DNA of 57,388 nucleotides, filler included, from Hydrolagus affinis (GCA_012026655.1; 3 parts of 3 records of this genome joined end to end with filler, not necessarily neighbours in it), one strand, 5' to 3'. Positions 1 through 28,202 are shown, counted from the first letter of the whole stretch. Translations and numbers: made by a program. Notes: generated by a model from the sequence alone, not told the origin.

Positions 1-2640
1 ATACAGCCACTGTGTTAAATAGGAACAGCCTAATTGATGGAAAATGCTAATAACCGTTGGTCTATAATCTGAGCGAGGGCGACTCCAGTAATGTCCTTTG
101 ACATTTACCAATACAGCAGAACGCTTGGAGTTTTAACTCTTAATTGTTTGAAGTCAGGTATATTTTTAGCAGCTACGCAACATGTTCAATGTCCACGCAT
201 CAAATTTATCATTGTTTTGCACCACATTTTGTTGCCTCCCTCTCTGCTTTCCTTAAAAGCCTCTGCCTCCCTACATATCCAGTTCTGACGAAGAGTTGTG
301 GACCCAAAATGTTGACTCACTTTTCTTATTCCACAGACGCTTCCTGACCGGCTGATTGATCTCAGTGATTTCTGTTTTTGGATCACCTAATGGGAATTTT
401 GAGTTCACAGCATCCTCAGTCTGAAGTGTAGTTGATGCTCGTGAATACTGTTCGGGAGCATCCGCAGTAGTGAAACACGTGTATATTTTGACAGTCTCTG
501 TTTCACCAACAGTGCACAACCTTGATATTGATATTAGGAGAAGGAATGATCACTGTAATGGAGCTCTAGGCTGAGGAATAGGTCACTTATATGTCATTTT
601 AGGCTGATTGCTGTTGAGGGCAGATTGTTCAATGGAGAGAAGAAGAAATTATTATTTGCTTGATGTTTTCCGATTATCAAAGAGACAGTTATGTCCAAAC
701 CCAAATACCCAAATGGCTGATGCAGAATCCAGTCTGTACAGAGCTGGAGTCTGACCACACATTGAGTATTGCACAGTGATGTAGTCACTGTGACATACAG
801 GGGCTGCCCAAGCGGCAATGCAGAGGAAACCAATATGAATGATCCCCAGGATTAGAGGAATGTGCTTTGAGAGGTGTTTAAAATTATCAATGGGATTGGG
901 AAAAGTAAATTTATATCAATAGTTTAGGTTATAACAAAACAGCCGAATAAGAACACATAGGTTTAGAGTTGCTAAGCCAATATTAGGACAGATTCTAGGT
1001 TTATCTTCACCGCAATTAAAATAAAGAATTTAAATAGGTTGGAAGGAAAGTTGGTTGAGGCCACGAGGCCACCTCGTTTAAAACACAGTTAGAGGTTGTG
1101 ATGGGGGGATGGTCGGGAGGGTGTTCTCAAAGGATGAGATCAGATACGCCGAAGGGCCTTCTTTAATTCATCCGATTTCAAGATTTTTTTTTGAAAAAGG
1201 TGTGTGTTAAACCGACGCTATCACTTACAGAACAAACACAACTACAACAGCACCACACGTGGCGAGAATGCATGTCTGTTGTTAAACAAACAGTGAAATA
1301 CTCGCCACAGTAGGTACAGCTGCTTTACTGCAATAGGAACAGCGTAATTGATGATAAAAGTTCATAACCCGCATTCTATAAATAATCTGAGAGAGCAAGA
1401 CTCTTGTAATGGAATACCACTTTGACATTTACAAATACAGCAGAACGATTGCGGTTTTAATGCCGTGTTGTGTCATGTCAGGTATATTCATAGCGGACAC
1501 CTGAATATGTATGCACGTAAGCTTCAATGTTTTTTTTTACTGCATTCGACTATTGCGCCACATGTTGTTGACCAGGTTTTAAATTAGTCCATACCAAATG
1601 TTGTTTCATTGATACTAAAGAGACAGAATAACTAGAGGAGACTGATTTATACAATATGCTTTTTATTCAAATGCTGATCGAGCATGTTACACAGCAGTTC
1701 CTCATATTGTAGTAGCTAACAAGCTAATTGATAATCTAATAATTCAGTGGTTACCTTTACAGATTGATCAGATTCACAGTGAATACATTTTAGCAATTAA
1801 GTATGGTTATATGTGTATTCTAAGCAATAATTTCCAACAAATTTCTTGAGAACGTATTATCTAATAAACTAATAAATGCAATTATATTTGAAACGAGTGA
1901 AAATGGAAAAGCAGTACAAGATTAATGTGCACATTTTTCAATATAGTGGAAAATTGCATCTAATATAAACCAATATCAATTTCAGATGCATTACTTAGAT
2001 CTTGGTTTCCTGCAGATAGTGGCGGTTTCTCCATAGTTTCTCACATGGAGCTCTGCTTACTCTGTATTATTAACGATAGTCAAATTCAACACCACCTAAA
2101 GCCAGCGCCTCATTCTCTGCTCCGTATATCATCTATAAAACATAACGTCACAACAGCAATACATGGTAATTGTAGAACACATTTTATGATGGGAGTACAT
2201 CCCAGGGCACTGAGAGATTGTTGTCTTCACTGTTCTGAGGATTGCTGTATAAGCAATCATCAGAAAATCCACAAGTTTAAATATTGCAAATAATTAATAA
2301 GCAAACTTACAGTTTTACTGAATACTCTGTTAACAATTACATGACATCTCGCATTTAAATGATATATTGAGGCTGCAAAATAGCATGAGGGGATTATATT
2401 TAAAATATTCTTATTTATTGATGATGAACAGTATCTTTCGATTACTACAACTCGGTTTTCAGATTAAACATCTTCTGAAAGGCAATTAATGAATGTACCT
2501 GCTCTTTGCAGTGACTCGATCCTTTCTGATTTCTGCATGGGCCTTTGATAAGAAAGTCAATAAATGAAGAATGCATTTTCGATTATATTTTGCTTAGAAC
2601 AAATGAAAAGCGTTAGGAAGCTCACAAGCTACCAGAGTCT
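1..2640. repeat. Locus-specific duplicated non-coding block lying 3' of each VJ-C1 receptor unit (copy 1)
   Basis: By eye, 1-1000 aligns with 3330-3695 plus 4030-4200 and with 18860-19590. 1230-2640 aligns with 4200-5170 and 21900-23300 (shared strings such as GGAACAGCGTAATTGATG, TTTGACATTTACAAATACAGCAGAAC, CTTAGATCTTGGTTCCCTGCAGATAG). Confidence 0.8.
843..1170 (+). mobile_element. Degenerate CR1-type LINE 3' fragment
   Basis: Decayed similarity to the CR1 ORF2 C-terminus seen at 5288-5701. Boundaries approximate. Confidence 0.55.
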
Positions 2641-2754
2641 GATTTTCGAAATATATATATGTATAAAGTTGTCTTCTTGCATCAAACTGAGTTTATTTAA
2701 AGGCTAATCTGAACACATTAGCCTTTAAATGCTAATTAAAGGCTAATTAGCCTC

Positions 2755-3067
2755 CAACTTAACGTCAACAAACCGGAAGCCCTCCTGATCGACTCACGTC
2801 AATGCCTCAGCACCTGAGGCACTGACAACATCAGCATCCAAGGCTGCTCCCTCCACCTCTCGAAGCCAGTCAGGAATCTGGGCGTCTTGTTTGATCCCGA
2901 ACTGTCCTTCCTCCCTCATATCCACGCCATGACTGGTACAGCCTTCCACCACCTCCATAACATTGTCAGACTCCGCCGCCACCTCATCCTCCCATGCTGC
3001 CGAAACACATCTTCATTACATCTAGGCTGGATTACTGCCTTCCCAGCTCACCCTTTCACAAGCTGCA
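2755..3067 (+). mobile_element. L2-type LINE fragment
   Basis: LNVNKPEALLI...LGVLFDPELSFLPHI...AFHHLHNIVRLR, typical L2 ORF2 C-terminal region, similar to 20116-20856. Confidence 0.75.
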
Positions 3068-3240
3068 CCATGTCTGACTCTGGCTCTGATGATCTGTAAC
3101 ACACAAACGTACAGTATTTGATATGGAGGAAGCAGCTGTGACACTGACTTCCTCTTTTGTTGTGTTGGGGAAATGTGGCTGATGTGGTTGATGTGATTTG
3201 AAATCACAGCAAAATTGTGCAACTGATAACTATTCCTATT
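3068..3240 (-). pseudogene. Orphan promoter, 5'UTR and ATG of a third VJ-C1 receptor paralog; coding exons missing
   Basis: Near-identical to the gene A promoter and 5'UTR at 13389-13545 (TCTGACTCTGGCTCTGATGA...ACACTGACTTCCT...GATGTGATTTGAAATCAC). Homology stops at ATGG, where L2 sequence begins. Confidence 0.8.
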
Positions 3241-3695
3241 AATTGCAGAGAAGGGCCTCCTTCAATGAAGCAAAACTGAAGAGGAATTATTTTTAAACAG
3301 ACACCACTGTGCACAAAGCACTCACAGTGCAACACCACATCATGTAGTAAGAATATGTTGCTCCATAAAGAATGAAATATTGTGCGCAGTTGTTAAAGCA
3401 ACTTTCTTACAATAACAACAGCCTGATTGATGGAAAACGTTAATATCCCATGGTCTATATATAAAATGTAAGAGAGCAAGACTCCTGGAAATTGAATTAT
3501 GCTTTGACATTTACAAATCTAGCAGGATGATTGGAGTTTTAACTCTTAGATGTTTGAAGTGAGGTATAGTTTTACCAGATATGCACAATGTTTAATGACC
3601 ACGCTTCAATTATTTCATTGTTTTGGATGAATAGCACCACATTTTGTTACCTCCCTCTAATTATTAGTCCTCAAATGCCTCTCCCTCCCTACATT

Positions 3696-4027
3696 CCTAG
3701 TTCTGATGAAGAGTCAAATATATTGGTATATCGAAAAATTTGGTATATTAAAAAAAATCGATATATCGCAAATATCGCTATATCATGTCCGGCGATATAT
3801 CGGTATAATACAAACTTTTTCAACTTACCTTGTCGATATCCGAATGCGCGCGCACACCAGAATGTGTGCGCACCCCTGAATACGTGCCCACCTCCAAATA
3901 CACGCGCACCTCCGAATGCGCGCGCATGCGCAGGACAAAAAAAACGCGATATCGATATATCGGTATATATCAATATGGACCAACCGATATATCGATATCG
4001 GAAAATTTCCATATCAACGGACCATAG
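3696..4027. mobile_element. CpG-rich, internally palindromic non-autonomous element (MITE-like)
   Basis: Repeated GATATATCG/CGATATC palindromes flank a GCGCGC-rich core. It interrupts the duplicated block, and a reverse-complement homolog lies at 29813-29950. Confidence 0.6.
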
Positions 4028-5171
4028 CAATCACCCACTGACATTTAATGCTGATCAATGTTGAGCTCAAGAGAAACGGAGATTGTTCAATGGAGAGAAG
4101 TTGTTATTTTCTTACTGTTGTCCGAATATCAAAGAGTCCAAACGAAAATACTCAAATGGCTGAAGCAGAATCCAACCTGTAACTGTGCTCTGGTCTGAAC
4201 ATTCCTCGAGTATTGCCCAGCAAGAAAGAGAGCAAGGCTCTTGCAATGGAATTATACTTTGACATTTACAAATACAGAAGAACGATTGGGGTTTTAATGC
4301 TGAGTTGTTTCATGTCATTCAAAGCAGAAGAGTGAATATCTATGCATGCAAACTTCAATTTTTTTTACTGCATTCGACTATTGTGCCACATATTGTTGAC
4401 CAGCTTTTAAGTTAGCCCATATCAAGCATTGTTTCATGGATACTAAAGAGACAGAATGACTAGAGGAGACTGGTTCATACAATATGCTTTTTATTGAAAT
4501 GCTGATTGAGCATGCTACACAGCAGTTCCTAATATTGTAGTAGAGTTATTCTATATTCTAATAATTCTGTGGTTACCTTTATGGATTGATCAGATTCACA
4601 GTAAATATGTTTTAGCAATTAATTATGGTTATATGTGTATTGTAAACAATTATTTCCAAGAAATTTCCTGAAGACATATTATGTAAATATTAATAAATGT
4701 GATTGAAACAGGTGAAAGCGGAAGAGAATAATTAATATGCACATTTTTCACTATAGTGGAAAACTACATCTAATAATAACATAATAAACAATAATAAATA
4801 TTTGATATAGAGCTTTCCACATCTTATTGATGTCTCAAAGCGCGTATGTATACTGTACACCATTATCAGTGCCTGTTGCATTTCTTAGATCTTGGTTCCC
4901 TGCAGATAGCTGTTGCTTCTCCTCTGTGGTTTCTCACATTCTCTATTCTTAACGGACGTCAACTTCAACGCAACATAAGCCACCACCTTACTCTCTGCTC
5001 CGAGCATCATCGATAAAACATAACACCACAACAACAACACATTGTATTTGTAGAACATCTCTCATGTTGGCAGTAGATCCCAGGTTGCTGATAGATTGCG
5101 GTCTTCACTGTTCTGATGATTTGCTGGATATATATACTCATAAAAAGGCTCACACCTTTAAAATATTTCTA

Positions 5172-6179: not shown

Positions 6180-7155
6180 TAACAACAACTTTGATTTATA
6201 TAGCGCCCTCCATGCAGGACGGCATCTCAGAGCATTTCAGAGTGCTCGAGCCAAGCGAAGGGGGAAAAAGGTGAGCAAAGGCATGGTTGAACAGAAAGGT
6301 CTTCAACCGAGACCTGCAAGAGAGGGAGTGAGGTGAAGGGAGTGAGGAAGGGAGTTCCAGAGCTTCGGGGCGTAGTGGCTGAAGGCATGGCTGCTGATAG
6401 TCGAGCGGAGGATTCAGGGATAAGGGGATAACCAGAACCAGAGGAGTGAAGGCAACGGGTGCTGTTTTGGCGGAAGTGGAGGTCAGAGAGGTAGGGGGTG
6501 CAGAAGAGTAGAGAGATTTGAAGATAAAAGTGAGGTTCTTTAAATCGATCCTCTCCGGGACAGGGAGCAAGTGAAGTCTGGCAAGGACTGGGGTAATAGG
6601 GGAGCAAAGTTTGGTGCAGGTGAGAATGCGGTTGGCAGAGTTCTGAAGGAGCTGGATTTTATGGATTGTGGTGGAGGGGAGACCAGCGAGGAGTGCATTT
6701 GCACAGTCCAGCCAAGAGGTGACAAACGCATGGACCAAAGTTTCAGCAGCTTTTGGAACAAGGAATTGCTGGAGACGGACAATATGTAGGAGATGGAAAA
6801 AAGCAGTGCTCGTGAGGGACTAGATGTGGGCGAGGAAGGACAGTTGGGGGTCGGACCTGATGCCAAGCTTGCGTACTGGTTCATAGAGTTTTAGGGGCAG
6901 GTCGGTTAGGTGGAGTAGGTGAGAACTGCATGATTGAAGACGATGACGAGAGCCAAAGAGTATGGCTTCCGTCTTGTCAACTTTCAGCCGCAGGAAATTC
7001 ACGCTCATCCAGCTCCTGATGTCTGACAGCCAGGCTGACAGTACATCAAGGTACTGGGTTGGGGGTCGCAAAATGAGGTGGAAAAATAGAGTTGGGTGTC
7101 ATCCGCATACATATGGAAGTGTATCCCATGTCTGCGGATAACATCATCAAGCAGA
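6180..7155 (-). mobile_element. L2-type LINE 3' portion with (TTG)n-like tail
   Basis: YADDTQL-like RT remnant near 7100; LSDIRSWMSVNFLRLKVDKTEAILFG; HAFVTSWLDCANALLAGLP; AACAACAAC tail on + at 6180. Confidence 0.85.
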
Positions 7156-7246: not shown

Positions 7247-7411
7247 TTATGCGATTCCTGATTCCATGGCAGTGACAGCTTTGTAATTTCTGATATTTAC
7301 CTCCGCATACTCTGAATTCTTGTTGCGGCGTTTAGCTTTTCCTGTTTTTTGGTTGCGAGGGAAATCCAGATCAGCGTAGGTCAGCTTGTCAGTGGCTGCT
7401 CCTTGCTTGGT
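7247..7411 (-). CDS. Gene A exon 7, cytoplasmic, ITIMs LTYADL and SEYAEV, then stop
   Basis: TKQGAATDKLTYADLDFPRNQKTGKAKRRNKNSEYAEVNIRNYKAVTAMESGIA*; polypyrimidine-CAG acceptor. Confidence 0.85.
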   Translation of the reverse strand, partial: TKQGAATDKLTYADLDFPRNQKTGKAKRRNKNSEYAEVNIRNYKAVTAMESGIA

Positions 7412-10400
7412 CTGCAAAAGAAAAATGGTTGGGATTGTCTTTTTGCTGCTTCCATAAATACACATAAATGTACATAGAATGGTAAGGAAACTGAGCAGCT
7501 AGTGTTTATAATTCACACAACATCCATCCTTACCTATTTTCTTCTGTTTCTCTCGAATCTCTTCTCATGTATGCATTAAGTTTTATGTTAATAATATTGT
7601 TACTTTATTGTGAGCCCATCAACCCCATGGCCAATTGATAAATTGGTTTCAAATTGCAATATCCAGTTGCAGATTTAAGGCTTGCCGATCTCAGTGATGA
7701 GCTGACAGCTGCTCTCATGTGTTGGTGCAGATTAGTTAATGTTGCAATTCCTAATTGCTCTATGAGAAATTAACATCTCAGGACATCTGGATCGGAACAC
7801 ATGTGATCCTCTTTAAATTAATTGCTGAATTGTTGATTCTTATATAAAGATATAATCTTAGGAATTGATAGCCCAGAAGGCCAGTCTGCTGGTCGTACAC
7901 AGGCTGCCTATTTGAAGGAATAATGTATTGAGTCCCATTTATTCGGCTTTCACCAACGCTCCTTTAAACTGATCCATTTGGGATGTCCTCTCAAAGTGAA
8001 AGATACTATATAAATGTAAGTTTTTATTGATTGATTTTATAAATACCCTTTATCTTTAGTTTAAAAAATGATATTGGTTAAATGCTGGAAGGTTGAACAC
8101 GTTTGACAACTAAATGGAGCATCAAAACATGTTAGAAGATTCGGTGGATGGAGGGTGGGGGGAACAGAATCGGGGATAAAGTATCAAAGTCAATGATGCC
8201 TATTTACCAAACCTGTTTAATACAAGTTTAATATATGTTGTTTACCTGGGCGTATACTGTCCTCTCTTCCTGGTGTTTAGGTCTTGGAATTTTATTGGAA
8301 CTTCTCAAATCCAATGTTACATAAGCCACGTTGTCACCCACTGCTCCCTCCCCCGTCTGTAAAACAAAGTATAGAGTTAAATGGTTGTTCGGTTGCCTTC
8401 CCAGGTCTGTACTCTTTGACCATGGTATTGAATAAGTAGGGATTTTAGGGAAACAATGGCTACTGTCATTTCAAATAGTTAAAGACAGGTAACATTGAGT
8501 AGGTAGATTCAGTTCTCTCTAGAGTCAGTAAAACTCATGTTTCCAACTGAGGTTTTGCCATCCACCCCCATGAAAATATGTGCAGACCTGATTAGATGGA
8601 CCAAACAAGATGTCTCACATACATAAAGTATTATCACTTAAAACATGCTGGAACTCGTCACAATCCTGACTCAGAATGGTTACTAGAAATGTAAATTACA
8701 GCAAGTAAACCGTATTTATTCAAGTAACAACTTAATCCTGTTATGGGAAATAAATACGTGTGTAATTCTGGAGGAATTATTAAATTTAGAAAACTTTCAG
8801 TCCACAATCCAATTCAACGTAACTGCTGCCTTATTGGGGTGGGACGAGATTTGTCCAGTGTCCTAGTGAATCACAATCATAAGAAATTGACGATACACTT
8901 TGTTATGGTTTTTGGGACCATTTTGTGTGCTGCAGGTTGGTTGCAGTAAATAGAGTTACTACAAAGTCAACGATTCGCAACCGTGAAGCATTTCTTAGAC
9001 CCTTATAGTTATATGGGCCACAATGATAATTACTAAATTGGTCCATTGGTCACCCAAATTATTGGTGATAAACTTACCCGATGTTCAAGATTGCCCAATC
9101 GAGTTGGGTTTCCCTTTGATCCTAAATATGAATAAAATTTATTGAATTATGTATTTACTAAATTTCAATGTTAACACTAAAATAATGCAATTGTTCTACA
9201 TTTCAGGAAGAATGTAATGACAAGTAAAATCTCCACGTCACTAATACTTTCCAAAATCCTTAACACTGTGGAACTCTTATCTTGAACATTTGAAATCTCA
9301 ATGTAATGGGAAATAAAGGCTATGCCTGACAACTATTCCTTAATTCTTTTAGTTTTTCCTCTTAAGAAACTGGGATATTTCCTGCAATCTGGGTCTAGGT
9401 CTGGGTCTAGCTCTCAGTAATAAAAAATATTTTCGAGGTCACAATTTCAATATACTGTAATATATATGGTGAATTTTACTACTGATAAACATACTCTTGG
9501 TTCTAGTCCCTGTATTTTTTGATGTCATTCATCACCACAGTCACTTACAAATGCACAACATTCATCGTATTTTAAGGTGATTGAAATATATTAAGTCAGA
9601 TTTCAGACATTGGGATTTGGAAAATGAGACATCCTGGGATACTAACATTCACCATGAGAAATTGTTACAGTAATGAATCTGTTGCAATAACTACAAGTAA
9701 TTGATATTATATCGTTGACATCATATAAATCTGCCGTCAAATTTGAAGTAACAAGTAATACTTTTTCTCTTTGCTAACCATTAGTGCATTCTTAGTTCTG
9801 ATATCAACGGGTAATATTTACAATGGCAATGAAATGAGAATTTTCTTACCATTTTTCTTTTTCAATTGGCATCGCTTCCCAATTATCATCAAAAGCACCA
9901 GAAATGTGACCACACCCGCAGCACAGCCACCATATAATAAATAACGGGTTTGATTTCCACTCTCTGGAGAAATAGCATACACTGAGGTGAAACTGTACAT
10001 TGCGTAAGGGAACGATTTATAGCTTTAGTACAATAGAAATGTCATGCATATCATTTATGAAGCATATCTTGCGGTAAATTCAAGTAAGTATTAAGCACAA
10101 TAACCGGATTAACTATTATGTCTAATCATAATCTGTGTCTTTATTGAAATAAGAATAAAAATTGGAAGGGGACCTTCACTGACAACATTTTGCTGTTGAT
10201 GTAGGGTAAGAAGGGTACAATCTACATATGCACTCGCATATTTTTATTGTTGTTCTTGATTCTATTACACAGGCGACGGCAATACACAGAATACCAAAAT
10301 GCGATATAAATTTCCAGAGGAACCATCACAAAATACAATCCACACCTGTACATCGCGCCGTCTGCACACCTGTACATCGCGCCGTCTGATCACAGCGATG

Positions 10401-13391
10401 AAACTTGCTCACTTGTTATTAGTAAAAGGGGGGAAGATGTTGGGGTGGAAAAGCATTTGATGACCAAGTGTCCTGTGCTGAAACTGAGATTTTGAAAATT
10501 ATGCAGCTTTTTGAATGTGCTGATGATATCCATAATTTTTAAGTAGAGAATATCAGTTAGACTAACAAAATGTTTGATGATTCAGGTCAAATGTTTCACA
10601 TTCAAACAGGATGATGTAGTTTGTCACCCCCATGCAGAAAACCCTCATCACCATTCTCAACACCTTTGTTCCCTATCAACTCTGGCATTGCTTCCTATTC
10701 CTGCAGATCTCCCGGGATAGCAATATTGGCAGTTCCTCAGGGTTCTATCCTCTGCCTCTCCTCTTCACTATCTATATGTTTCTACTTGGCGACAACATCT
10801 GTAGACATATATTGCACATCCACTTGTATAACGATGAAACCCAAATCTCCCGTCTTCCTCCAGAAAAGGCCTCCAATTCCTTGATGAGTTCTGAACTTCT
10901 TCAGCGGAATAATAATCCCTGCATTTGATACAGCACCTTACAGATCGAATGCAATTATTAGTATTAGTATTATTCTGTTATTGTCATCTAAAATTGCTTC
11001 AGTTGATTCACTTCAATGCAATTAAAGGTCTCTGTGAAAATTCAATGAATAACAGTTGACTCCTTAAAAATCGTTAAGCAGCTTACCAACAATAGATTTT
11101 GTGACAGTGTAGGTGGCAATAGCTGAATTCTTGAGGCTAATGTGGGACACCAGACAGGTAGAAATAAATAGACGCTATCTGGACAGACGTGAATATTCGA
11201 TAGAACTGGAGACCTTATAGATCTTTGTGATTTATATAGCGCCTTATATATCGAATGCAATGATTATGATTATTATTATCTCGTTTATTGACGTCTCAAA
11301 TCGCTTCAAAAGATTCACTTTATGAATCAAGGCAAGTAAACGTGCCTATGAGAATTCAATTAACAAATTAAAAATCGGTTAGCAACTTACCTGCGTCAGA
11401 TTTTGGGTCGGTGTAGGTGGCAATAGCTGAAGTCTTGAGGCTGACATGAGACACCAGACAGGTATAAACAGATGATATCTTGACAGACTGTATATCTTCA
11501 ATAGAGCTAGAGACCTTCTTGATTTCCCCAGAGTTCTGCTTTTCTATGGTTGCTGACCCTTCAAGCTTTGTTTCTGGTGTTGGAATAATTTGGCTCCCAT
11601 CTTTATACCATGTGAAGATAAAATCCTTTGGGTTACACCCGGTAATTTCACACACAAGAGTTTGATGCTCAGTTGAATTTCTAGGGAAAATCCTCAGTGG
11701 AGTTGGGGGAACTGCAGAACAGAGAGTGGAGGATATTCATATTAACTTTGATCAATTGGCGGGACAAACTTTATTTTGATCCATTTCTTTGCAAGACTAT
11801 GAGTCCTGAATGCAAATGGAAGGTTCTTTAGACACACAAATATCCCTCTCATCAGGCGAAATTGATCACTGCGAACTCTCGAACAGACGAGATAGAGAAT
11901 TCCTGACAGGTGTTTATACATTGTATTATTCTGGCTCAATTGGTGGCTTTCTCGCCTCTGAGTTAGAAAGATATGGGTTCAGGCTCCGCATCGGGATCTC
12001 ATGGCATTCTTCAAAAATAGAACACAATTTCCCTGGTGGCCTGCCCTACAATAACGCAAATTTGAAAAAAGAAATGGTCATCCACCCCATGGCTGTTGTG
12101 GGACATTGCTGTGAATAAATTGGTGGCTGTGTTTGCTCATAAATTACTCAGTCTCATCACTTTGGGAAATATGATACATGTGATACATTTGCAGTGGCTT
12201 AAGTTGGTTGGGGGCGCAGCTTTAGAGTCTTGAGCCCCCAAGTGCGTGTGGAGCCAAGGGACCCCAGTGTGTGGAGCCTCAACGAAAACTTAGTTAGGGT
12301 GGGCACCGATATTAAAGTTTGGAAGCCACTTCTCTAGCGGGTTTCAATGGTGTGGCAAGGCACTGTATCAAATGAAGGAATTGTATTATTTAAGTCTTGA
12401 GAGGTTTTGATTAGGTAAAGAGGGAAACAGTCAAAAACAAGAATTCATCAATTAAATTTTTTACCATGAAATAAAGGAGAGGTTGAATACTGATTTTTCT
12501 GAGAGGCGATTGGATCGTAATCAAAATACTGTACTAAAGCAGTATCCATAACAGTTATAAAAAAGGAATTTAAAAATCATAGTTCCTTTGTCTTCTATAT
12601 GGATTTTGGAATACTCGTGCGAATAACATGCATCAATTCTGTAACTGTTATAACGGTAGAATATATAAAATATTTCATTAAGTTGTGGTGACTTGAATTG
12701 TTTTGAGTTTTAGTTGTGTATATGTTGAAATTAAAATATTATTTCACTTAATATATGCCATAAACTAGTACGTGAAAATGATTAATGGACAAACAATATA
12801 CATCAATATACCATACAACGCATCATTACTTTTAATGTAATTTCCAAATACTTTTGCTCTTCATCCACACTCACCGCACACAGTTAAGCTTGATCCAGGT
12901 CCTGTTCCAATTATTGATCCCTGACGGATCAATGTGCAGCGATAGACTCCAGAGTCCTGTAAACTCACATTCAGGAACTGGAAGAAGCCGCTTCCTTTGC
13001 CTTTCACACCAAATGTTTTCCTGCTATCCACCTGTGTATCCAAGTAGCTGTCCTCACCCTCCTTCTCCCACTTCACCTCCTCTCCTGAACTGTCTTGCGA
13101 GAAGGGAAAGATACAGCTGAATGTGACGTTTGTCCCACTGATGGCAGCCACACGTTCAGGGATTTGAGTCACTTTCACTGAAGAATCGCCAGTAACTGTC
13201 AGAAAATAAAGTCAAACACCGATTTCTGAGAAAAAGTAGGTACATAGAGAAAAAAACTTAAATATGTATGATAAATGGCATGTGGAAACAAGGTAGCACA
13301 TAATTCATAGAACAATGAAATTATGCAATAAATATATACCAGTTGAAGCAATATTTAAGACAGCCAGGTACAGAAAGAGAACACTCCCCAT
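7247..13391 (-). CDS. Gene A: non-rearranging VJ-C1-TM inhibitory Ig-superfamily receptor (SIRP/VJC1-like), 7 exons, 375 aa predicted
   Basis: Exons 13391-13340, 13195-12875, 11711-11391, 9963-9850, 9121-9078, 8356-8246 and 7411-7247. All introns are GT-AG with matching phases (1,1,1,1,0,0). Total 1128 nt, open to TAA. Confidence 0.9.
8246..8356 (-). CDS. Gene A exon 6, cytoplasmic, ITIM VAYVTL plus TVYAQ
   Basis: TGEGAVGDNVAYVTLDLRSSNKIPRPKHQEERTVYAQ|GTAAAC; 111 nt, phase 0-0. Confidence 0.8.
9078..9121 (-). CDS. Gene A exon 5, short cytoplasmic exon GSKGNPTRLGNLEHR
   Basis: 44 nt, with TAG acceptor and CGG|GTAAGT donor. It converts phase 1 to phase 0 exactly as the next exon requires. Confidence 0.75.
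9850..9963 (-). CDS. Gene A exon 4, transmembrane
   Basis: ESGNQTRYLLYGGCAAGVVTFLVLLMIIGKRCQLKKKN; uncharged hydrophobic span followed by basic stop-transfer residues. Confidence 0.9.
10605..10900 (+). mobile_element. L2-type LINE RT fragment in a gene A intron
   Basis: AVPQGSILCL..FTIYMFLLGDNICRHILHIHLYNDETQI, a decayed PQG/YxDD RT region. Confidence 0.65.
10960..11225 (-). pseudogene. Partial tandem duplicate of the gene A C1 exon 3' end plus flanking intron
   Basis: KVSSSIE...(TAG)...TCLVSHISLKNSAIATYTVTKSIV|GTAAGC matches the exon 3 end KVSSSIE...TCLVSHVSLKTSAIATYT. It has an internal stop, and the 5' half is missing. Confidence 0.8.
11391..11711 (-). CDS. Gene A exon 3, C1-set domain
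   Basis: VPPTPLRIFPRNSTEHQTLVCEITGCNPKDFIFTWYKDG...VYTCLVSHVSLKT; C-W-C pattern with the C1 Y-x-C-x-V-x-H motif. Confidence 0.92.
12875..13195 (-). CDS. Gene A exon 2, V-set domain with germline J-like motif
   Basis: VKVTQIP..VTFSC..VKWEK..DSGVYRCTLIRQGSIIGTGPGSSLTVC. Has Cys23, Trp41, Cys104 and G-x-G-S-x-L-x-V in a single exon, with no RSS. Confidence 0.92.
13340..13391 (-). CDS. Gene A exon 1, signal peptide MGSVLFLYLAVLNIAST
   Basis: ATG, hydrophobic 17-mer, phase-1 donor G|GTATAT. Confidence 0.85.
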
Positions 13392-21770: not shown

Positions 21771-23479
21771 AGCGTGGTGCGGCTAGGGTGGGTGTTGTGT
21801 AAAGATTATATCAGATATACCAATGGGCCTTCTTCAGTTTAGACAATTAAAACTTTTTTTTAAGTTTGCGTTATGCAGACACTATCACCCACAGCTACAA
21901 CAGAAGCTTACATAGTAAGAATGGAAATCTGTTGTTACATCAACAAAAAAATATATTCCGCAGTATGAGGCTTTAAAGGTGTTACTTTACTGCAATCGGA
22001 ACAGCGTAATTGATGGAAAATGTTCAGAACCCGCAGTCCATATATTATCTGAGAGCGTGAGACTCTTATAAAGGAATTATCGTTTGACATTTACAAAAAC
22101 AGCAGAACGGTTGGGGGTTTAACGCTGAGTTGTTTCATGTCAGATCTATTTTTAGCGGATATGTGAATATTTCAACACCCACGCTTCAAATTTTTTTTTA
22201 CTACTTGACTATTGCACAACATATTGTTGAGCAACTTTTAAGTCAGCCCTTACTGAGTGTTGTTTCATTAATACTGAAGAGATAGAGGGACAAGATGAGA
22301 CTGGTTTATACAACTTGCGTTTTATTGAAAGGCTGATTGTTCATGAGACACAGGAGTTCCTCTTGTTGCAATAGCTAACGAGCTACTTTTAATCAAATAA
22401 TTCAGTAGTTACCTTAAGGATTGATCAGATTTACTGTGAATACATATAGGCAATTAAGCATTGCATTGCACACAGCATACGTGTACTATAAGCAACATTT
22501 TCCAAGAAATTTCTGGAGAGCGTATAATGTAATGTACAAATAAATGCAATTATGGTTGAAATAGGTAAATAGAACAGCAGCACAGGACTAATGTTCACGA
22601 TATTCACTATGTACATATAATATACAACAATATCAGTATCTATCTCTGATGCATTCTTAGATCTTGGTTCCCTGAAGATAGCGGCGGCTTCTTCACTGTG
22701 GTTTCTCGCATGGAGATCTGCTTACTCTGTATTCTTAACGGGAGTCAAATTCAACATGACATAAGGCGCCGCCTCATTTTCTACTTCGAGCATCATCTAT
22801 AAAACATAATGCCACAACAACAAAACAGTTTATTTGTGGAACATCCTTTATGTCGAGAGTACATCCCAGGGCGCTGATAGATTGTTGCCTTCACTGTTCT
22901 CGAGATTGCTGTATATGTAATCATCGGAAAGCTCATAAATTTAAAACATTGCAAATATTTAATAAGTAAACTTACAGTTTTATTGAAAATTCTGTTAAAA
23001 ATTACACGACACTTCATATTTGAATGATACATTAAATCCGAGCATTTGCGCGTAGAGAATATATTTTAAATATTCCTATATATTTATGGTGAACAGTTTT
23101 TTTCCATTGCAACAACCCTGAGTTCAGATTAAATATGTGCTGAAGAACAATTAATGAAGGCGCTTGCTCTTCGCAATGGCACAATCCCTTCTGGTTTATG
23201 TGTGGGCCTTTGAAAGAAATTCAATAAATGAAGTACTGTATACACTTTTGGTTATGTATCGCACAGCCCAAATGTAAAGGATTTAGAAGCTCACAAGCTG
23301 CCTGTCTGTTTTTCTATTAAAAAAAACTCCATCCCAGAGCCCCCCGAATTCTGCCTTTCCCGCAACTGCTTAAAAATCTTTGATGAAACAATCAGGAGAA
23401 TAGATAGTTGAGGGTATAAAATATAAAACCAATAGGTAAAACAGTATAACCTTATATAAATCAGCAGTGACACAGTTGG

Positions 23480-23690
23480 AATAATGTATCCAGGATTGTT
23501 TACTTTGCTTAGGAAATTTACCAGAATGATAACGGGGAAGATACATCTGCCATATGAGCACAGACTGGATGATGTAGAACGTTTCGCCTTGGAACACAGG
23601 CGGTTGAGTGTGGACCTGATAGAGATCTATAAAATCATGAGTTGCGTTGATAGAGTCGATGGAGAGTTTATTTCAAGTGGAAAGTGAGCT
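23480..23690 (+). mobile_element. CR1 fragment
   Basis: RKFTRMITG..LPYEHRLDDVERFALEHRRLSVDLIEIYKIMSCVDRVD. Confidence 0.75.
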
Positions 23691-24684
23691 AGCAAACATG
23701 CAAAAGTGTTGAAACTCTTTAGCACACAACGGGTAGTTAGGTTATACAATCCATCTCGGGATTGCATAACCTATAGGGGTTGCTGAAGTATAGGGGAGAG
23801 GTAGTTAATTTAAATCTATCTCAAGATGTATATTTTTGACCTCAGTTAAAGTCATTTTTCTTATCCCCACTGCCCTATCCCACCACCAGCTGAGGAGCCT
23901 GGCCAGTAGTATAAAGCGCTTTGGGATTTCCTCCAGACTTGAATCGCGCTATATAAATGTATATCTGTGCTGTACTGTTAAATGTCGCCATAATTTACAA
24001 TAACCTCTTAGAATTCTACACCTGCATTTCTATTGATACCTGATACTATGCTCTGTTTATATAAACAATCTGCATTTGGGTATATAGGGCACAATTTCCA
24101 AGTTGGCTAAAGAGACAAAAATGAATCATTGAAGAGATATCAAGACTGGTAGATTGGACAGACAGATTATATATTAAACGTAGAAAAGTACGGTTGTATA
24201 TTTGGGGATTTGTAATCGGGTCTGGCAGCGGGCTGCGGGTTCAGTGGCCCAGGCATAATATGTACTTTACATTATGAAACATTATCTACACATAGTTTGT
24301 AAAACAAATTAATTGTAGCGCTATGTGCAAAAAAAGACAGATTAGTGGGATGTGGACTCCTTAAAGATTAATGAGAGACACTGTAGGGTGAATGGTCTTC
24401 TGTTCTGTACACTTCTATGGTTGTACCACAGTAGATTTCAGACATGCGTTGCATGGAAATTTCTGATTAAACATGAAGCTAAATATATGTAGCGAGACAT
24501 TCTGTGAAGACATTGGCCTTTATGAATTGATCGCATCATATTAATCATTGGAACTGCTTTACACGATTTTCCTCAGATTTTCTCACCTTGCCCCCATCCC
24601 CCAGACTATCAAACCTGTTAACTGAATTGTTGTATTCAATTATATATTTACATTCACATTAACTAAAATAGGAATGAATCTTAC

Positions 24685-24798
24685 CGTTCCTTTTTTTCAA
24701 ATTGCATTGATTCCCAATGATGATCAAAAGCAGCAAAAATACCAGGCCTCCCCCTACACATCCAGCGATCAGTAGGTAGTCAGTCTGAGAGTAATTCT
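24685..24798 (-). CDS. Gene B transmembrane exon
   Basis: ENYSQTDYLLIAGCVGGGLVFLLLLIIIGNQCNLKKRN; 114 nt, the same length as the gene A TM exon. Confidence 0.9.
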
Positions 24799-27700
24799 CT
24801 GCAAGAACATCATAAACTGAGGGTCAGTGATCCCAGCAATGTATTGGTTTTTCAGTAATAGCAATCATGTAGAACATACAGGAATTTAAGATATACATTT
24901 GATAATCTCACTTCTAATTGAACAGAATCCAAGAGTTTGAAGGTTGATGAGTTTTTTAAGAGTCTTCTCGGGGACTAGTATGAATATGTGAATCTGATTT
25001 GATATATATTTCTATGGAGTATACGGACAGAAAATGATATGATTCTCCATTGTCTTCAGTACAAATAAAAATGAAATATTTTCCAATGATAATCTAGCTA
25101 ACAGCAAGTCATTGTAGGATATCTGTAAATTACCTGTGATGGGTTTCGAAATGATGTAGACGCCAATCACTGGAGTGGTGAGGGCGACGTGCTTTGCCAC
25201 ACAGGTATAAACAACCCCGCTCTGTACAGGTTGTGTGTCTTCCATATCAACTTCGAAAAGTCCATCTGATTTTCTCTTTTTTGTCAGATTTGTCCCAGTA
25301 ATAATTTCAATGTCGTCTTTATACCAAGTGAGCGTTATATCCTCCGGGTAAAACCCAGCCGTTTTACACACAAGAGTCTGAGATGTCAACGAATCTCTGG
25401 GGAATATCTTTGGCGAAGTCGGGGGGACTGTAGGACAGACAATGGAGCAGAATTGCATTACTTTTGATCAGTTGGAATGTACAACTTTATTCCCATTTGA
25501 ATTGTATATGAAATCTTTCCCTGCAACAGTATAAGAGGGAAAGTCCTCCGAGACTCTAACCATGTGAGGGCGCAATTCAAATGTTGTTAGAACAAGGAAT
25601 CTAGATTATAACGGAAAGAGACTGATCCTGTTTTTTTTAAACAATGTTTAGGGCAGCAAATGATAAAAAGATGCTTTGCAGGAGTTCCAGCTGTTATTCA
25701 GCCGATTAATAGGTGGATGAAAGGATTTAGGTACGATGATAAAATGGGTAAACATGGTGTATATTTGATGGATTTGGGAAGAATGGCAGGTAATTTTATT
25801 GAGCTGTCAACGAATGCCAAAGTATTGCAGGATGCATAATTTTGATAGAAAACAACAACAACAACAAAATTGCACTTGTATCAGTGCTTTTCACATTGGG
25901 AGGACGTCCCAAAGCGCTGAACAGCCTGGTCGGGACCCGAACAGAGGGGGGAGGGTCGGGGGAGGGGGAAGAGTTAGTGGAGGGGCTGAAGGCGCGGTTG
26001 AAGAGGAAGCTCTTGAGACCGGCCTTGAAGGAGGAAAGGAAGGAAGCGAGGGGGAGGGGCTGCGGGATGGATTTCCACAGTGTGGGAGCAGAGAGGCTGG
26101 AAGCCCGGCTGCTGATGCTTGGGCGGTTAGGGCGGTGGACGCGGAGCAGGCCTGAGTCTGCTGAACGGAGGGTGTGGGCGGCTGATAGGGAGACAGTAGT
26201 CAGAAAGATAGGTGGGGGCAAGGCCGTGAATGGCCTTGAATGTGAGGACGAGGATCTTGAATACGATCTTGAATTAGACGGGTAAAAATACTAAGGTATC
26301 CAACTGTCAAATTTTGGCTGAACCTATTAGATGTGAAATGAAACAGTTCTACTCACATGCAGTTCAGTGAAATTATGAAATTATGGAATCCACTCCGGTA
26401 AGTGGCTTTAAACGCCAATTAAAGTTTGATATTCAAAATGGAGAGATAGGGGTTTGAAAGAGGATTGAAAGTGGCGCGTGAAACAGAATTAAATATTCTG
26501 CCACCATTCTCGAGCAATAATAACCTACATGACTATGAACCATAGAATAGTATCCCGGAGAAAACTGGAAATTGCATTAAAATTAGAGAGAAAGCAAAAT
26601 CTCTCCATTCACACCAAGATTTATTCTGTTCTGATCTCCTTTTTTTTTAATTTCGTAAGTTTCCAACCAATTTTGAATGATTAGAGTAGAGCATTCAAAA
26701 TAACTTAAGGACTGATTGTGGGACATTGTTTCACGTAGATATTTGAGGGCATCTCATATTGTCTACCTGTTTTTAAACATTTACGTTTCATATAAGTTAG
26801 GAAACTGTCAACATCTGGACCAAATAGGGGGAACCTCAAGCCACAGAGCACTCTCTAATAATAATAATAATCATCCTAGCATTTGATATAACGCTTTTCA
26901 CGTCTTTTAAACATCTCAAAGCGCTTCATAGAATATACTATAAAGTGAATTCTCTATATATTTGTGGACGAATCGCAGCAACCAATTGTGCATAGCGGTG
27001 CCCGCAAACATTCGTAGATTGAAATCACCAATTTATTCAAGTTTTTTTTAGGGATTATTATTAGTCGTGTGGAGTAAGGAAACTTGCCAAAGGTTTCGCC
27101 CTGTCTGGATTCAAACATATGGGTCTCACGCTTGTAAGGCGAGCGCTCTATCCACTGAACTACAGATCTCCAGCATGATATTGGATTGTCAGTGTACACT
27201 GTGATCTTCATGTATTGATGTGGAACAATCTGAATCAATGCGTTCAGGACAGAATTAAATATCATACAGAATTAAATATCATATAATTAAATATCATAGA
27301 GATATAAATATCATATAGATTAAATATCATATGATAGCGGTAGGTGGGATACATGCATTTGATAGCATTGCTTAACGCAGTTATAAAGGAACCCAAATTC
27401 CCACTTTGCTGAGTGGTATAAACCCGCTGGCTCACATCAGCACAGCAACAAATGGGCAGAATTGTACTAGAAAAATATTCTACTGATTAATGTGTTTCGG
27501 GTTAAAATCAAATCTGTTCCCGTGTACTGTGCAATCATAGCCTTTTGTGAGAGTTGAAAATTAACCAAATAATGTACCCGTAACAATGTCAAATTGTCCC
27601 CAATACATTCCCCGTTACTATTCTGTCCACACTTACCATGTACAGTTAAACTTGTTCCAGTTCCATTTCCTGCTAGTTTCCCCTGACGGATTATTGCACA

Positions 27701-28202
27701 GTAATAGACTCCGGCGTCGTTGAATTTTACATTTAGAAGTTGGAACGTTTTGCCATCAAATATTTTCCTGTTATCAGGTCTTTGATGTAAATAGTCACTC
27801 TCTCCTTGCTTCCACCAGTAAAATATTGTATTTGCTTCCTCTTGAATAGCCTTGCAGGCGAAGGTAATCTTTTCACCTTGTATTCCTGTTATTTCTGTAG
27901 GATATTGAATCACTTTCATTGTTGCACCACCTGTAACTGAGAAAATAACACACATCGATAACAAGCGATTGTGGAATCTACAATTGATGATTATAGAGTG
28001 GAAGAAAGGTGAGAAAATAGGTGTAGGGAAGGAGAGAGAGAGAAGGCGGAAGAGAGAGGAAGAACGATGGATGCATTCACTTAACATATTTTGAAATTCT
28101 TCATCGATATCGATCTGTATTTAAATGCACTGTTGTGAAACACTTACCTGTGAAGATAATCCCCATTAGAGAAAGACAGGGGGACATATCACTGGCCACC
28201 AT
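24685..28202 (-). CDS. Gene B: paralogous non-rearranging VJ-C1-TM receptor; cytoplasmic tail unresolved, apparently short
   Basis: Exons 28202-28148 (leader), 27936-27637 (V), 25427-25134 (C1) and 24798-24685 (TM). All GT-AG, phase 1, open. Candidate tail exon from 24614 (GLIVWGMGAR*). Confidence 0.88.
25134..25427 (-). CDS. Gene B C1-set exon
   Basis: VPPTSPKIFP..LVCKTAGFYPEDITLTWYKD..DGLFEV..VYTCVAKHVALTTP; canonical C1 motifs GFYP and Y-x-C-x-x-x-H. Confidence 0.93.
25855..26285 (-). mobile_element. L2-related 3' fragment in the gene B V-C1 intron
   Basis: AACAACAACAACAAC tail; LRSADSGLLRVHR..SSLSAPTLWKSIP..FKAGLKSFLFNRAF. Confidence 0.75.
27062..27172 (-). mobile_element. tRNA-derived SINE; other copies at about 38515-38630(-), 39585-39690(-), 44710-44812(-), 46165-46228(-), 53590-53675(-) and 55212-55312(+)
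   Basis: Pol III A/B-box head (GTAGTTCAGTGGATAGAGCG..GTTTGAATCC) followed by a shared body ending TTTCCTTACTCCACACG. Confidence 0.75.
27253..27332. repeat. Minisatellite, about 5 copies of AATTAAATATCATA
   Basis: Visible tandem repetition with a 16-18 bp period. Confidence 0.85.
27637..27936 (-). CDS. Gene B V-set exon with J-like motif
   Basis: MKVIQYP..ITFAC..FYWWKQG..DAGVYYCAIIRQGKLAGNGTGTSLTVH. Confidence 0.92.
28148..28202 (-). CDS. Gene B leader MVASDMSPCLSLMGIIFT
   Basis: ATG plus G|GTAAGT donor; same phase and position as the gene A leader. Confidence 0.8.

What the first reader, a model, noticed from the sequence alone, without database searches (positions are those of the whole stretch)
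7247..13391. Complete non-rearranging antigen-receptor-like VJ-C1 inhibitory receptor next to TCR V segments
Seen: a spliceable 375-aa type I protein with leader, a V domain carrying a germline G-x-G-S-x-L-x-V J motif, one C1 domain, an uncharged TM and Tyr motifs VAYVTL, TVYAQ, LTYADL and SEYAEV. There is no RSS at the V/J boundary. Known: C1 domains are confined to Ig, TCR, MHC, B2M, tapasin, SIRP and a few B7-like molecules. SIRP-alpha has LTYADL and SEYASV motifs but a V-C1-C1 ectodomain. Non-rearranging VJ-C1 genes have been proposed as resembling the antigen-receptor ancestor. Inference: an ITIM-bearing VJ-C1 family physically beside a TCR alpha/delta V array may be an undescribed relic of the pre-RAG receptor or a divergent SIRP lineage.
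Basis: partly seen in the sequence, partly recalled or inferred. Interest (0 to 1): 0.9.

Follow-up and report, generated by a model that had tools for sequence, protein, structure and literature searches.

The report
Shark-lineage SIRP-like inhibitory receptor gene
This is an intact gene for a non-rearranging immune receptor (one antibody-like V domain, one C1 domain, an inhibitory tail) from a gene family found across chimaeras, sharks and rays. It resembles the mammalian SIRP-alpha "don't eat me" receptor, but this piece gives no sign that it sits beside T-cell receptor genes.

Summary
The gene is real and intact on the minus strand. It has seven coding exons and encodes 381 aa, not 375. 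A 44-nt mini-exon (9121-9078) is needed to keep the tail in frame, and it is conserved in Callorhinchus.

- **Domains.** The V exon carries a germline-joined J-like strand. The next exon is a genuine C1-set domain. The TM is uncharged.
- **Tail.** It has VAYVTL, TVYAQ, LTYADL and SEYAEV arranged as two two-tyrosine modules, as in SIRP-alpha.
- **No rearrangement signals.** There is no RSS anywhere in the 30-kb piece and no TCR V segment. The only other Ig exons belong to a tandem paralogue with a degenerate tail.
- **Relatives.** Every homologue that could be named comes from Chondrichthyes (Callorhinchus, sharks, rays). They form large tandem clusters and include short-tailed members with an Arg in the TM, so the family looks like paired receptors. 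RefSeq names them inconsistently: SIRP-alpha-like, SIRP-beta-like, tapasin-related-like.
- **Affinity.** Ectodomain similarity to SIRP-alpha, UrIg2 and Ig chains is about equal, so SIRP or PRARP orthology is unresolved.
- **Expression.** No RNA evidence could be obtained.

Verdict: a SIRP-like V(J)-C1 inhibitory receptor, a new variant of a known kind. The "pre-RAG relic beside TCR" reading is unsupported.

The parts
13340..13391 (-). Gene A exon 1: start codon and most of the signal peptide (split leader, ends in phase 1)
   Evidence: ATG at 13391, donor CTG|gtatat. The leader is 71% identical to the Callorhinchus leaders in L002/L003.
12875..13195 (-). Gene A exon 2: end of the leader plus a V domain with a germline-joined J-like G strand (GTGPGSSLTV), 321 nt
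   Evidence: Pfam V-set 33.6 bits. Family V HMM E 2.5e-44. AF2 model pLDDT 89.9. Foldseek neighbours are VNAR, VH/VL including the J strand, NKp30, CD79b, CD8b and SIRPa d1. The G-x-G..L.V motif is nearly invariant in 47 family V domains.
11391..11711 (-). Gene A exon 3: C1-set Ig domain, 321 nt
   Evidence: Pfam C1-set 27.7 bits against a cut-off of 21. The best PDB sequence hits are IgM C domains, TAPBPR, SIRPg/a and MHC II b2. AF2 pLDDT 77.5. All the top Foldseek hits listed are C1-set domains.
9850..9981 (-). Gene A exon 4: stalk, uncharged transmembrane helix and KRCQLKKKN stop-transfer, 132 nt (phase 1 to 1)
   Evidence: Acceptor cctcag|TG, donor ATG|gtaaga. 58-65% identical to Callorhinchus TM exons. 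Hydrophobicity scan.
9078..9121 (-). Gene A exon 5: 44-nt mini-exon (GSKGNPTRLGNLEHR) that shifts phase 1 to 0 and so keeps the ITIM tail in frame
   Evidence: Best of 48 candidate exons in the intron. 87% identical to GSKGNLTRLGNLEDR at the same position in L003. Also present in the RefSeq model P0180.
8246..8356 (-). Gene A exon 6: first two-tyrosine tail module (VAYVTL ... TVYAQ, tyrosines 23 residues apart)
   Evidence: 81-86% identical to Callorhinchus. The tyrosine positions are conserved in the family consensus.
7247..7411 (-). Gene A exon 7: second two-tyrosine tail module (LTYADL ... SEYAEV, 23 apart) and the stop codon
   Evidence: 65-67% identical to Callorhinchus. Related to exon 6 at 30-33% identity, which points to an internal exon duplication.
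11094..11225 (-). Pseudo-exon: copy of the 3' half of the C1 exon, with a stop, inside intron 3
   Evidence: tblastn 57% identity with an in-frame stop. Family C1 HMM positions 80-101 only.
22656..28202 (-). Gene B, a tandem paralogue upstream of gene A. Exons: leader 28202-28148, V(J) 27936-27637, C1 25427-25134, TM 24816-24685, mini-exon 23211-23168 (donor GC, not GT), and a last exon ending at a TAA where the TEYA tyrosine codon should be.
   Evidence: It groups with Callorhinchus P0024/P0171 at 100/100 support. Its tail has no canonical ITIM.
1994..5010 (-). Orphan tail-exon relics downstream of gene A: a tail-module-like exon 5010-4900, a mini-exon copy 2549-2496, and a last-exon copy 2074-1994 with a stop at the Tyr codon
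   Evidence: tblastn with Callorhinchus P0171/P0024.

Best explanation
Gene A is an intact, non-rearranging type I receptor gene. It is one member of a tandemly duplicated V(J)-C1 receptor family that is present in both chimaeras and elasmobranchs.

The protein has a signal peptide, one V domain whose J-like G strand is encoded in the same exon, one C1-set domain, an uncharged transmembrane helix, and a tail of about 110 residues. The tail is built from two duplicated modules, each carrying two tyrosines 23 residues apart.

Inferred mechanism: the V domain binds a ligand that is still unknown. Src-family kinases then phosphorylate the tail tyrosines. Each two-tyrosine module engages the tandem SH2 domains of SHP-1/SHP-2, which damps activation of the cell. 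This is how SIRP-alpha works.

Other family members have short tails and an Arg in the TM, so the family probably works as paired inhibitory and activating receptors.

Inclusion of the 44-nt mini-exon is required for the inhibitory tail. Skipping it would give a tail-less form.

Shown here: the gene structure, the domain types, the motifs, the family and its phyletic spread. Inferred: expression, phosphatase recruitment, ligand binding and the splice switch.
For: - **Gene structure.** Open exons with canonical splice sites and a 1146-nt CDS. The same 7-exon layout, including the mini-exon, occurs in several Callorhinchus copies.
- **Domain types.** V-set and C1-set by Pfam. The AF2/Foldseek neighbours listed are VJ-type V domains and C1-set domains.
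- **Non-rearranging.** No RSS anywhere in 30 kb.
- **Tail motifs.** Three canonical ITIMs and four conserved tyrosine positions. The motifs stay identical or nearly so while the rest of the protein evolves fast (dN/dS 0.75-0.87 in V and C1).
- **SIRP-alpha comparison.** SIRP-alpha carries ITYADL, TEYASI and LTYADL, and its ITYADL...TEYASI peptide (tyrosines 24 apart) activates SHP-2 (PMC5413580, PMC5589908).
- **Family.** Of 231 library hits to the C1 exon at E<=0.001, about 60 of the 150 listed align to gene A at E<1e-10 in a local BLASTP. Every one that could be named is chondrichthyan, from at least 14 species. The tree has two deep clades, each containing both holocephalan and elasmobranch genes.
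- **Paired forms.** Arg-in-TM, short-tail members exist.
- **Closest named kind.** The nearest named protein-language-model clusters are SHPS-1-like and SIRP-alpha, both at 0.96.
Against: - No transcript evidence. The only RNA runs offered (single-cell, a differently labelled organism) put no reads on any exon, and the one 'holder' run turned out to be DNA.
- The ligand and the phosphatase binding are untested.
- TVYAQT is not a canonical ITIM or ITSM.
- dN/dS is above 1 in the tail exons. The counts are small, but this could mean relaxed constraint.
- The neighbouring paralogue has a decayed tail, so pseudogenisation does occur in this cluster.
Confidence: 0.7

Rival explanations
1. The family is the true chondrichthyan (co-)orthologue of the tetrapod SIRP cluster. 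On this reading SIRPs date back to the jawed-vertebrate ancestor, which had a V-C1 ectodomain, and tetrapods later added a second C1.
For: - RefSeq automatic names: SHPS-1/SIRP-alpha-like and SIRP-beta-1-like.
- The family profile hits SIRP-alpha d1-d2 at 104 bits across V plus C1.
- SIRP-alpha d1 is among the V-domain fold neighbours.
- The nearest named language-model clusters are SIRP.
- The tail has four tyrosines in two pairs, with LTYADL identical to the mammalian motif.
- The family has paired inhibitory and Arg-TM members.
- A skate member has V-C1-C1 by exon duplication.
Against: - UrIg2 (115 bits) and IgA (124 bits) score as high or higher with the same profile.
- Per-domain C1 scores do not favour SIRP over IgM, TAPBPR or MHC II.
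- The automatic names are inconsistent: tapasin-related, CD276, NCR3LG1, Ig lambda, MHC II.
- Short ITIM-type motifs can converge.
- No tree with real SIRPs and no synteny test could be run.
Confidence: 0.3
2. The family is the cartilaginous-fish counterpart of PRARP, the non-rearranging VJ-C1 genes first reported in chicken (Fu et al. 2019). By my recollection, which was not checked here, PRARPs occur from bony fish to birds and carry ITIM-bearing tails.
For: If my recollection is right, the architecture is the same: VJ exon, one C1, TM and an ITIM tail. What I could read confirms only that PRARP is cited as a VJ gene in the MHC, and that the Fu et al. title speaks of two non-rearranging IgSF genes in chicken (PMC10751288).
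Against: The PRARP paper and its sequences could not be obtained, so nothing was compared. No SIRP-like or tapasin-related-like name appears in the shark MHC gene lists that could be searched; those files were truncated when stored.
Confidence: 0.15
3. It is a surviving relic of the pre-RAG antigen-receptor ancestor, retained beside the TCR alpha/delta locus.
For: - Single-exon VJ, split leader and C1 domain, as in UrIg and UrIg2 (PMC12227049).
- The family profile scores UrIg2 at 115 bits.
- The V fold is closest to rearranged Ig V and VNAR domains.
Against: - There is no TCR or other RSS-bearing segment in the piece.
- The claimed adjacency came from a window stitched out of unrelated pieces.
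- UrIg and UrIg2 have many C domains, and the paper that describes them never mentions an ITIM.
- The family evolves fast by birth and death, which is typical of innate paired receptors and not of a conserved relic.
Confidence: 0.07
4. Gene A is a recently inactivated or unexpressed copy in a decaying cluster.
For: - The neighbour, gene B, has a GC donor at its mini-exon and a stop in its tail.
- There are orphan tail exons and a half C1 pseudo-exon nearby.
- dN/dS is high.
- No RNA reads were obtained.
Against: All seven exons are open with good splice sites. All the tyrosine motifs and the Ig hallmark residues are intact. The RNA runs that were available were uninformative, not negative.
Confidence: 0.1

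Closest known systems
SIRP-alpha (SHPS-1/PTPNS1) and the SIRP paired-receptor family
   Same: - Non-rearranging V domain with a J-like strand, followed by a C1-set domain.
- Type I membrane protein.
- A tail with four tyrosines in two pairs, including an identical LTYADL and SEYAEV against SEYASV.
- Tyrosine spacing of 23 residues against 24 in the SIRP-alpha SHP-2-activating peptide.
- The family includes short-tailed members with a basic TM residue.
- Tandem gene cluster.
   Different: - One C1 domain, not two.
- The V domain is short (about 58 residues between the cysteines, VNAR-like, with no evident C'' strand).
- Sequence similarity to SIRP is no higher than to Ig, UrIg2 or TAPBPR.
- Orthology, synteny and CD47 binding are untested.
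- SIRPs are reported only from mammals, chicken and Anolis, and their origin is called unknown (PMC9652883).
[quoted passage not shown] 2019)
   Same: By my recollection of the paper, which was not checked here: a non-rearranging VJ exon, a single C1 domain, a TM and an ITIM-bearing tail.
   Different: By the same recollection, PRARPs were described from bony fish to birds as one or two genes. Here there is a large, fast-evolving chondrichthyan multigene family. No sequence comparison was possible.
UrIg / UrIg2 (elasmobranch non-rearranging Ig-like genes)
   Same: Single-exon VJ, split leader and C1-set domains in cartilaginous fish. UrIg2 is the second-best PDB hit of the family profile, at 115 bits.
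   Different: - UrIg2 has 9-11 C domains.
- It forms disulfide-linked homodimers with an Fc-like C2-C3.
- It is a single gene.
- The paper that describes it never mentions an ITIM (PMC12227049).
NITR (teleost novel immune-type receptors)
   Same: Diversified multigene families of ITIM-bearing and activating type I receptors (PMC2442602, abstract seen). From my own knowledge, their V domains often carry a J-like motif.
   Different: From my own knowledge, the second NITR domain, when present, is not C1-set. NITRs are found in bony fish (same abstract). No sequence relationship was tested.
Tapasin-related protein (TAPBPL) and B7-H6
   Same: A V-like domain followed by a C1-set domain. The TAPBPR C1 is among the best PDB sequence hits and the B7-H6 C domain is among the fold hits. 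These are frequent automatic names for family members.
   Different: From my own knowledge, TAPBPR has a large N-terminal domain and no ITIM tail, and the B7-H6 V domain lacks the J-type G strand pattern. The automatic names are not orthology calls.

Membership tests
SIRP family | N-terminal V-set domain with a germline-encoded J-like G strand | tested here: met
   Pfam V-set. The G-x-G-S-x-L-x-V motif lies in the same exon. The AF2 model aligns through the J strand of VH/VL, NKp30 and SIRPa d1.
SIRP family | Three-domain ectodomain V-C1-C1 (PMC12975943) | tested here: not met
   Gene A has only one C1 exon, and all Ig exons in the piece are accounted for. One skate paralogue, P0006, has two near-identical C1 domains.
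SIRP family | Cytoplasmic ITIM tyrosines that recruit SHP-1/SHP-2 | tested here: inconclusive
   The sequence motifs are present and conserved: VAYVTL, LTYADL, SEYAEV, plus TVYAQ, in pairs 23 residues apart. Phosphatase binding cannot be tested with these tools.
SIRP family | Phylogenetic grouping or synteny with the tetrapod SIRP cluster | not tested
   No bona fide SIRP sequence could be fetched as a usable record. The word-indexed searches returned only chondrichthyan proteins. The flanks of the Callorhinchus loci showed only family members.
SIRP family | Binding of CD47 by the V domain | not testable with these tools
   Needs protein binding assays.
SIRP family | Paired activating members with a basic TM residue and a short tail | tested here: met
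   Family members P0167, P0060, P0080, P0141, P0031 and P0038 have an Arg in the TM and short tails. None lies in this window.
PRARP | Non-rearranging VJ-C1-TM protein with an ITIM tail (feature list taken from my recollection of Fu et al. 2019) | tested here: met
   Gene A has this architecture. This shows resemblance only.
PRARP | Sequence or phylogenetic relationship to chicken and bony-fish PRARP genes | not testable with these tools
   The paper and its sequences are not held.
UrIg/UrIg2 | VJ exon followed by several to many C1-type domains | tested here: not met
   Gene A has a single C1 exon, against 9-11 C domains in UrIg2.
Rearranging antigen receptors (Ig/TCR) | Separate V and J segments flanked by RSS | tested here: not met
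   V and J are contiguous in one exon. There are 0 RSS-like sites in 30 kb on either strand (heptamer at least 6/7 starting CAC, nonamer at least 7/9, spacer 12 or 23 +/-1).
C1-set Ig domain | Match to the C1-set profile above the curated threshold, and a C1-type fold | tested here: met
   27.7 bits against 21 for gene A, and 48-65 bits for relatives. All the top Foldseek hits listed are Ig C, MHC, b2m, TCR C or IgNAR C domains.

The most novel reading that the evidence does not exclude
The family is the cartilaginous-fish root of the SIRP (and perhaps PRARP) lineage. If so, paired V(J)-C1 receptors with a double two-tyrosine SHP-binding tail already existed in the last common ancestor of jawed vertebrates, alongside the first rearranging receptors. 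In addition, a conserved 44-nt frame-setting mini-exon would act as a splice switch between an inhibitory form and a tail-less form of the same receptor.
Probability: 0.3. Interest if true: 0.65.

Novelty: new variant of a known kind. Interest (0 to 1): 0.5.

Why it matters
A 2022 review says SIRPs are known only from mammals, chicken and Anolis, and that their evolutionary origin is unknown (PMC9652883). Non-rearranging VJ-C1 genes are currently the main candidates for what the RAG transposon invaded (UrIg and UrIg2, PMC12227049).

A large, old V(J)-C1 family in chimaeras, sharks and rays, with a SIRP-alpha-like inhibitory tail and activating partners, bears on two points. It could push SIRP-like paired receptors back to the base of jawed vertebrates. 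It also adds another class of VJ-C1 genes to compare with Ig/TCR ancestors.

It also flags that current RefSeq names for these genes (tapasin-related, CD276, Ig lambda, MHC II beta, NCR3LG1) are unreliable.

It does not, on present evidence, support a receptor relic sitting in the TCR locus.

Tried and rejected
- **Alternative TM-exon acceptor at 9992 (143 nt).** It gives stops in the TM frame and was rejected.
- **Direct TM-to-tail splicing.** It is out of frame and would end after 7 residues. I keep it only as a possible tail-less isoform, because the Callorhinchus short model P0152 ends in a short out-of-frame stretch in the same way.
- **RNA support.** Two run searches and one read-laying gave nothing. 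X1 proved to be genomic DNA about 97% identical to the window. The three single-cell RNA runs hit only repeats.
- **Papers.** The PRARP, UrIg (2023) and 'primordial immune complex' papers are not held. Literature searches for a description of shark or chimaera SIRP-like genes found none.
- **Reaching tetrapod SIRPs.** I tried a homologue as query and then a 20-sequence family profile. Both returned only chondrichthyan proteins, so no SIRP/PRARP tree was built.
- **Tail exon against PDB.** Only chance hits.
- **Synteny from +/-10 kb flanks of Callorhinchus and Chiloscyllium loci.** Only family members were seen, or no DNA was returned.
- **Activating-type TM exon in the window.** None found.
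- **Supplementary gene lists of the shark MHC paper.** No SIRP-like entries, but the files were truncated when stored.
Full report
**What is in the sequence.** The feature lies on the minus strand. Reading the three frames and the splice contexts gives these exons:
- leader exon 13391-13340, ending in phase 1
- 321-nt V exon 13195-12875
- 321-nt C1 exon 11711-11391
- 132-nt stalk/TM exon 9981-9850
- tail exons 8356-8246 and 7411-7247.

All have AG acceptors and GT donors. Joined directly, the TM exon (which ends in phase 1) and the first tail exon (which starts in phase 0) are out of frame.

I enumerated every AG...GT interval of length 3n+2 in that intron and scored the candidates against the matching segment of homologues. 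The clear best was a 44-nt exon at 9121-9078 (GSKGNPTRLGNLEHR), with a pyrimidine-rich acceptor and a gtaagt donor. The Callorhinchus RefSeq model P0180 contains GSKGNLTQLGNPEDQ at that point. Callorhinchus loci L002 and L003 hold the same seven exons in the same order, with a mini-exon 77-87% identical.

The full CDS is 1146 nt and encodes 381 aa, not 375.

**Domains.**
- The V exon scores above the Pfam V-set cut-off and the next exon above the C1-set cut-off. Relatives reach 48-65 bits for C1-set.
- An AlphaFold model of the C1 exon (pLDDT 77.5) finds only C1-set domains among the top matches listed: MHC II beta-2, IgNAR C1/C3, beta-2-microglobulin, the B7-H6 C domain, CD1, TCR C-beta, and Ig C-lambda, mu and delta.
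- The V model (pLDDT 89.9) aligns over its whole length, including the G strand, with shark VNAR, rearranged VH and VL, NKp30, CD79b, CD8-beta and SIRP-alpha d1.
- The G-x-G...L.V motif is nearly invariant in 47 family V domains.
- The V domain is short, with about 58 residues between the cysteines. That fits the VNAR-like neighbours.

**Non-rearranging, and no TCR segments here.** A scan of both strands of the whole piece found nothing. The criteria were a heptamer of at least 6/7 starting with CAC, a 12- or 23-bp spacer (+/-1), and a nonamer of at least 7/9. HMMs built from the family V and C1 alignments, run on all six-frame open pieces, find exactly two V exons, two C1 exons and one C1 fragment. 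The claim of adjacency to a TCR V array therefore has no support in this piece.

**The tail.** It contains VAYVTL (Y302), TVYAQT (Y325), LTYADL (Y339) and SEYAEV (Y362). Three of these fit the ITIM consensus. The two tail exons are related to each other at 30-33% identity. Each carries two tyrosines 23 residues apart.

In SIRP-alpha, ITYADL and LTYADL are conserved ITIMs (PMC5413580). The ITYADL...TEYASI peptide, with tyrosines 24 apart, activates SHP-2 when it is phosphorylated (PMC5589908). The family consensus keeps all four tyrosine positions.

Against the Callorhinchus copy in L003, the motifs are identical or nearly so. The rest of the protein changes quickly: dN/dS is 0.87 in V and 0.75 in C1, and above 1 in the tail exons on small counts.

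**Relatives.** An exhaustive HMMER search with the C1 exon gave 231 hits at E<=0.001.
- In a local BLASTP, about 60 of the 150 listed align to gene A at E<1e-10, many over V, C1, TM and tail.
- Every family member that could be named is chondrichthyan. The genera are Callorhinchus, Heptranchias, Heterodontus, Mustelus, Pristis, Mobula, Hypanus, Chiloscyllium, Scyliorhinus, Cetorhinus, Carcharodon and Amblyraja.
- The automatic names disagree: SHPS-1/SIRP-alpha-like, SIRP-beta-1-like, tapasin-related-like, CD276, NCR3LG1-like, Ig lambda-like and MHC II beta-like.
- In Callorhinchus the genes lie in one orientation over at least 250 kb of one scaffold.

In a maximum-likelihood tree of ectodomains, gene A pairs with Callorhinchus P0003 at 100/98 support. 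The second gene in the window falls in a Callorhinchus clade at 100/100. Two deep clades each contain both holocephalan and elasmobranch genes. The family therefore predates the split between those two groups.

Some members have short tails and an Arg inside the TM. That is the usual signature of activating partners in paired-receptor families.

**Which known family?** With a 20-sequence family profile, the best PDB hits are an IgA1 heavy chain (124 bits), UrIg2 V-C1-C2-C3 (115) and SIRP-alpha (104, aligned across V plus C1). SIRP-gamma scores 89.

Per-domain scores for the single C1 exon are all 20-25 bits, for IgM domains, TAPBPR, SIRP-gamma/alpha and H2-M. Protein-language-model neighbours put SHPS-1-like and SIRP-alpha clusters first among named clusters, both at 0.96.

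So SIRP-alpha is the closest characterised analogue, mainly by architecture and tail. The ectodomain is about equally distant from all C1-bearing families. The three-domain ectodomain that defines SIRPs is not met.

From what I recall of the paper, PRARP (Fu et al. 2019) has the same VJ-C1-TM-ITIM plan. Neither the paper nor its sequences could be obtained. UrIg and UrIg2 share the single-exon VJ but have many C domains, and the paper that describes them never mentions an ITIM.

I could not import true SIRP or PRARP sequences, so no decisive tree or synteny test was run.

**Expression.** The one run that holds the sequence proved to be genomic DNA about 97% identical to the window. The three single-cell RNA runs laid reads only on repeats. 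There is therefore no transcript evidence for or against. The support for the exon model is comparative only.

**Neighbourhood.** Upstream lies a paralogue, gene B. It has a leader, V, C1 and TM exon, a mini-exon whose donor is GC, and a last exon that stops at the codon where the TEYA tyrosine should be. Its tail has no canonical ITIM. Downstream of gene A are orphan copies of tail exons. Inside intron 3 is a half C1 pseudo-exon. The rest of the piece is largely retroelement debris.

**Verdict.** The gene is best read as an intact SIRP-alpha-like inhibitory V(J)-C1 receptor from an old, fast-evolving chondrichthyan paired-receptor family. Databases already predict this family, but I found no paper that characterises it. 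A 2022 review states that SIRPs are known only from mammals, chicken and Anolis and that their origin is unknown (PMC9652883). That gives the family moderate interest. The 'pre-RAG relic next to TCR' reading is not supported.

Noticed in passing
window 22656-28202 (-): A second family gene, gene B, lies in tandem. Its leader, V(J), C1 and TM exons are intact. Its mini-exon donor is GC instead of GT, and its last exon ends at a TAA that replaces the tyrosine codon of the TEYA motif. It is either a tail-less variant or a pseudogene.
   Followed up: partly
window 1994-5010 (-): Orphan copies of tail exons and of the mini-exon lie downstream of gene A, with no V, C1 or TM exon. One has a stop at the Tyr codon. 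They look like remnants of a partial duplication.
   Followed up: partly
window 11094-11225 (-) and about 10910-11290: A half C1 pseudo-exon with a stop sits in intron 3. It lies inside a block of about 350 bp that reads and contigs skip or invert (joints 10934/11285 and 10914/11259). This is probably a repeat or an insertion/deletion difference between individuals.
   Followed up: no
Callorhinchus proteins P0152, P0158 (short isoforms) compared with window 9078-9121: The Callorhinchus short model P0152 ends just after the TM in a short out-of-frame stretch. That is what skipping the 44-nt mini-exon would produce. P0158 also ends just after the TM. The mini-exon may act as a switch between an ITIM-tailed form and a tail-less form.
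   Followed up: partly
family proteins P0167, P0060, P0080, P0141, P0031, P0038: These members carry a different TM type, with an Arg inside the helix and a VDH/FDH/MDH motif at its end, followed by short tails. They are putative activating partners. No exon of this type is in the window.
   Followed up: partly
protein P0006 (Amblyraja radiata): A skate member has V-C1-C1 with two nearly identical C1 domains, evidently from a recent exon duplication. The number of C1 domains therefore varies within the family.
   Followed up: no
window 5288-5701 (+), 6196-7141 (both strands), 15987-16442 (+), 20116-20856 (+): Long open frames that look like retroelement remains fill the space between the receptor genes. 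Two carry a YVDDTQ motif typical of reverse transcriptases. One abuts the 3' end of gene A.
   Followed up: no
window 10341-10388: A perfect tandem duplication of a 24-bp unit in intron 3.
   Followed up: no
window 9800-10600: The only DNA run that holds this locus (X1, about 97% identical) has no contig over this stretch, which includes the TM exon. The tool warns that such holes prove nothing.
   Followed up: no
gene A residue Cys124 (window about 12877-12879) and Cys150: An extra cysteine sits at the V/C1 junction (LTVC). It is conserved in the Callorhinchus gene-A-type copies and could make an interchain disulfide. A second extra cysteine in the C1 domain (ITGCNP) is not conserved.
   Followed up: no
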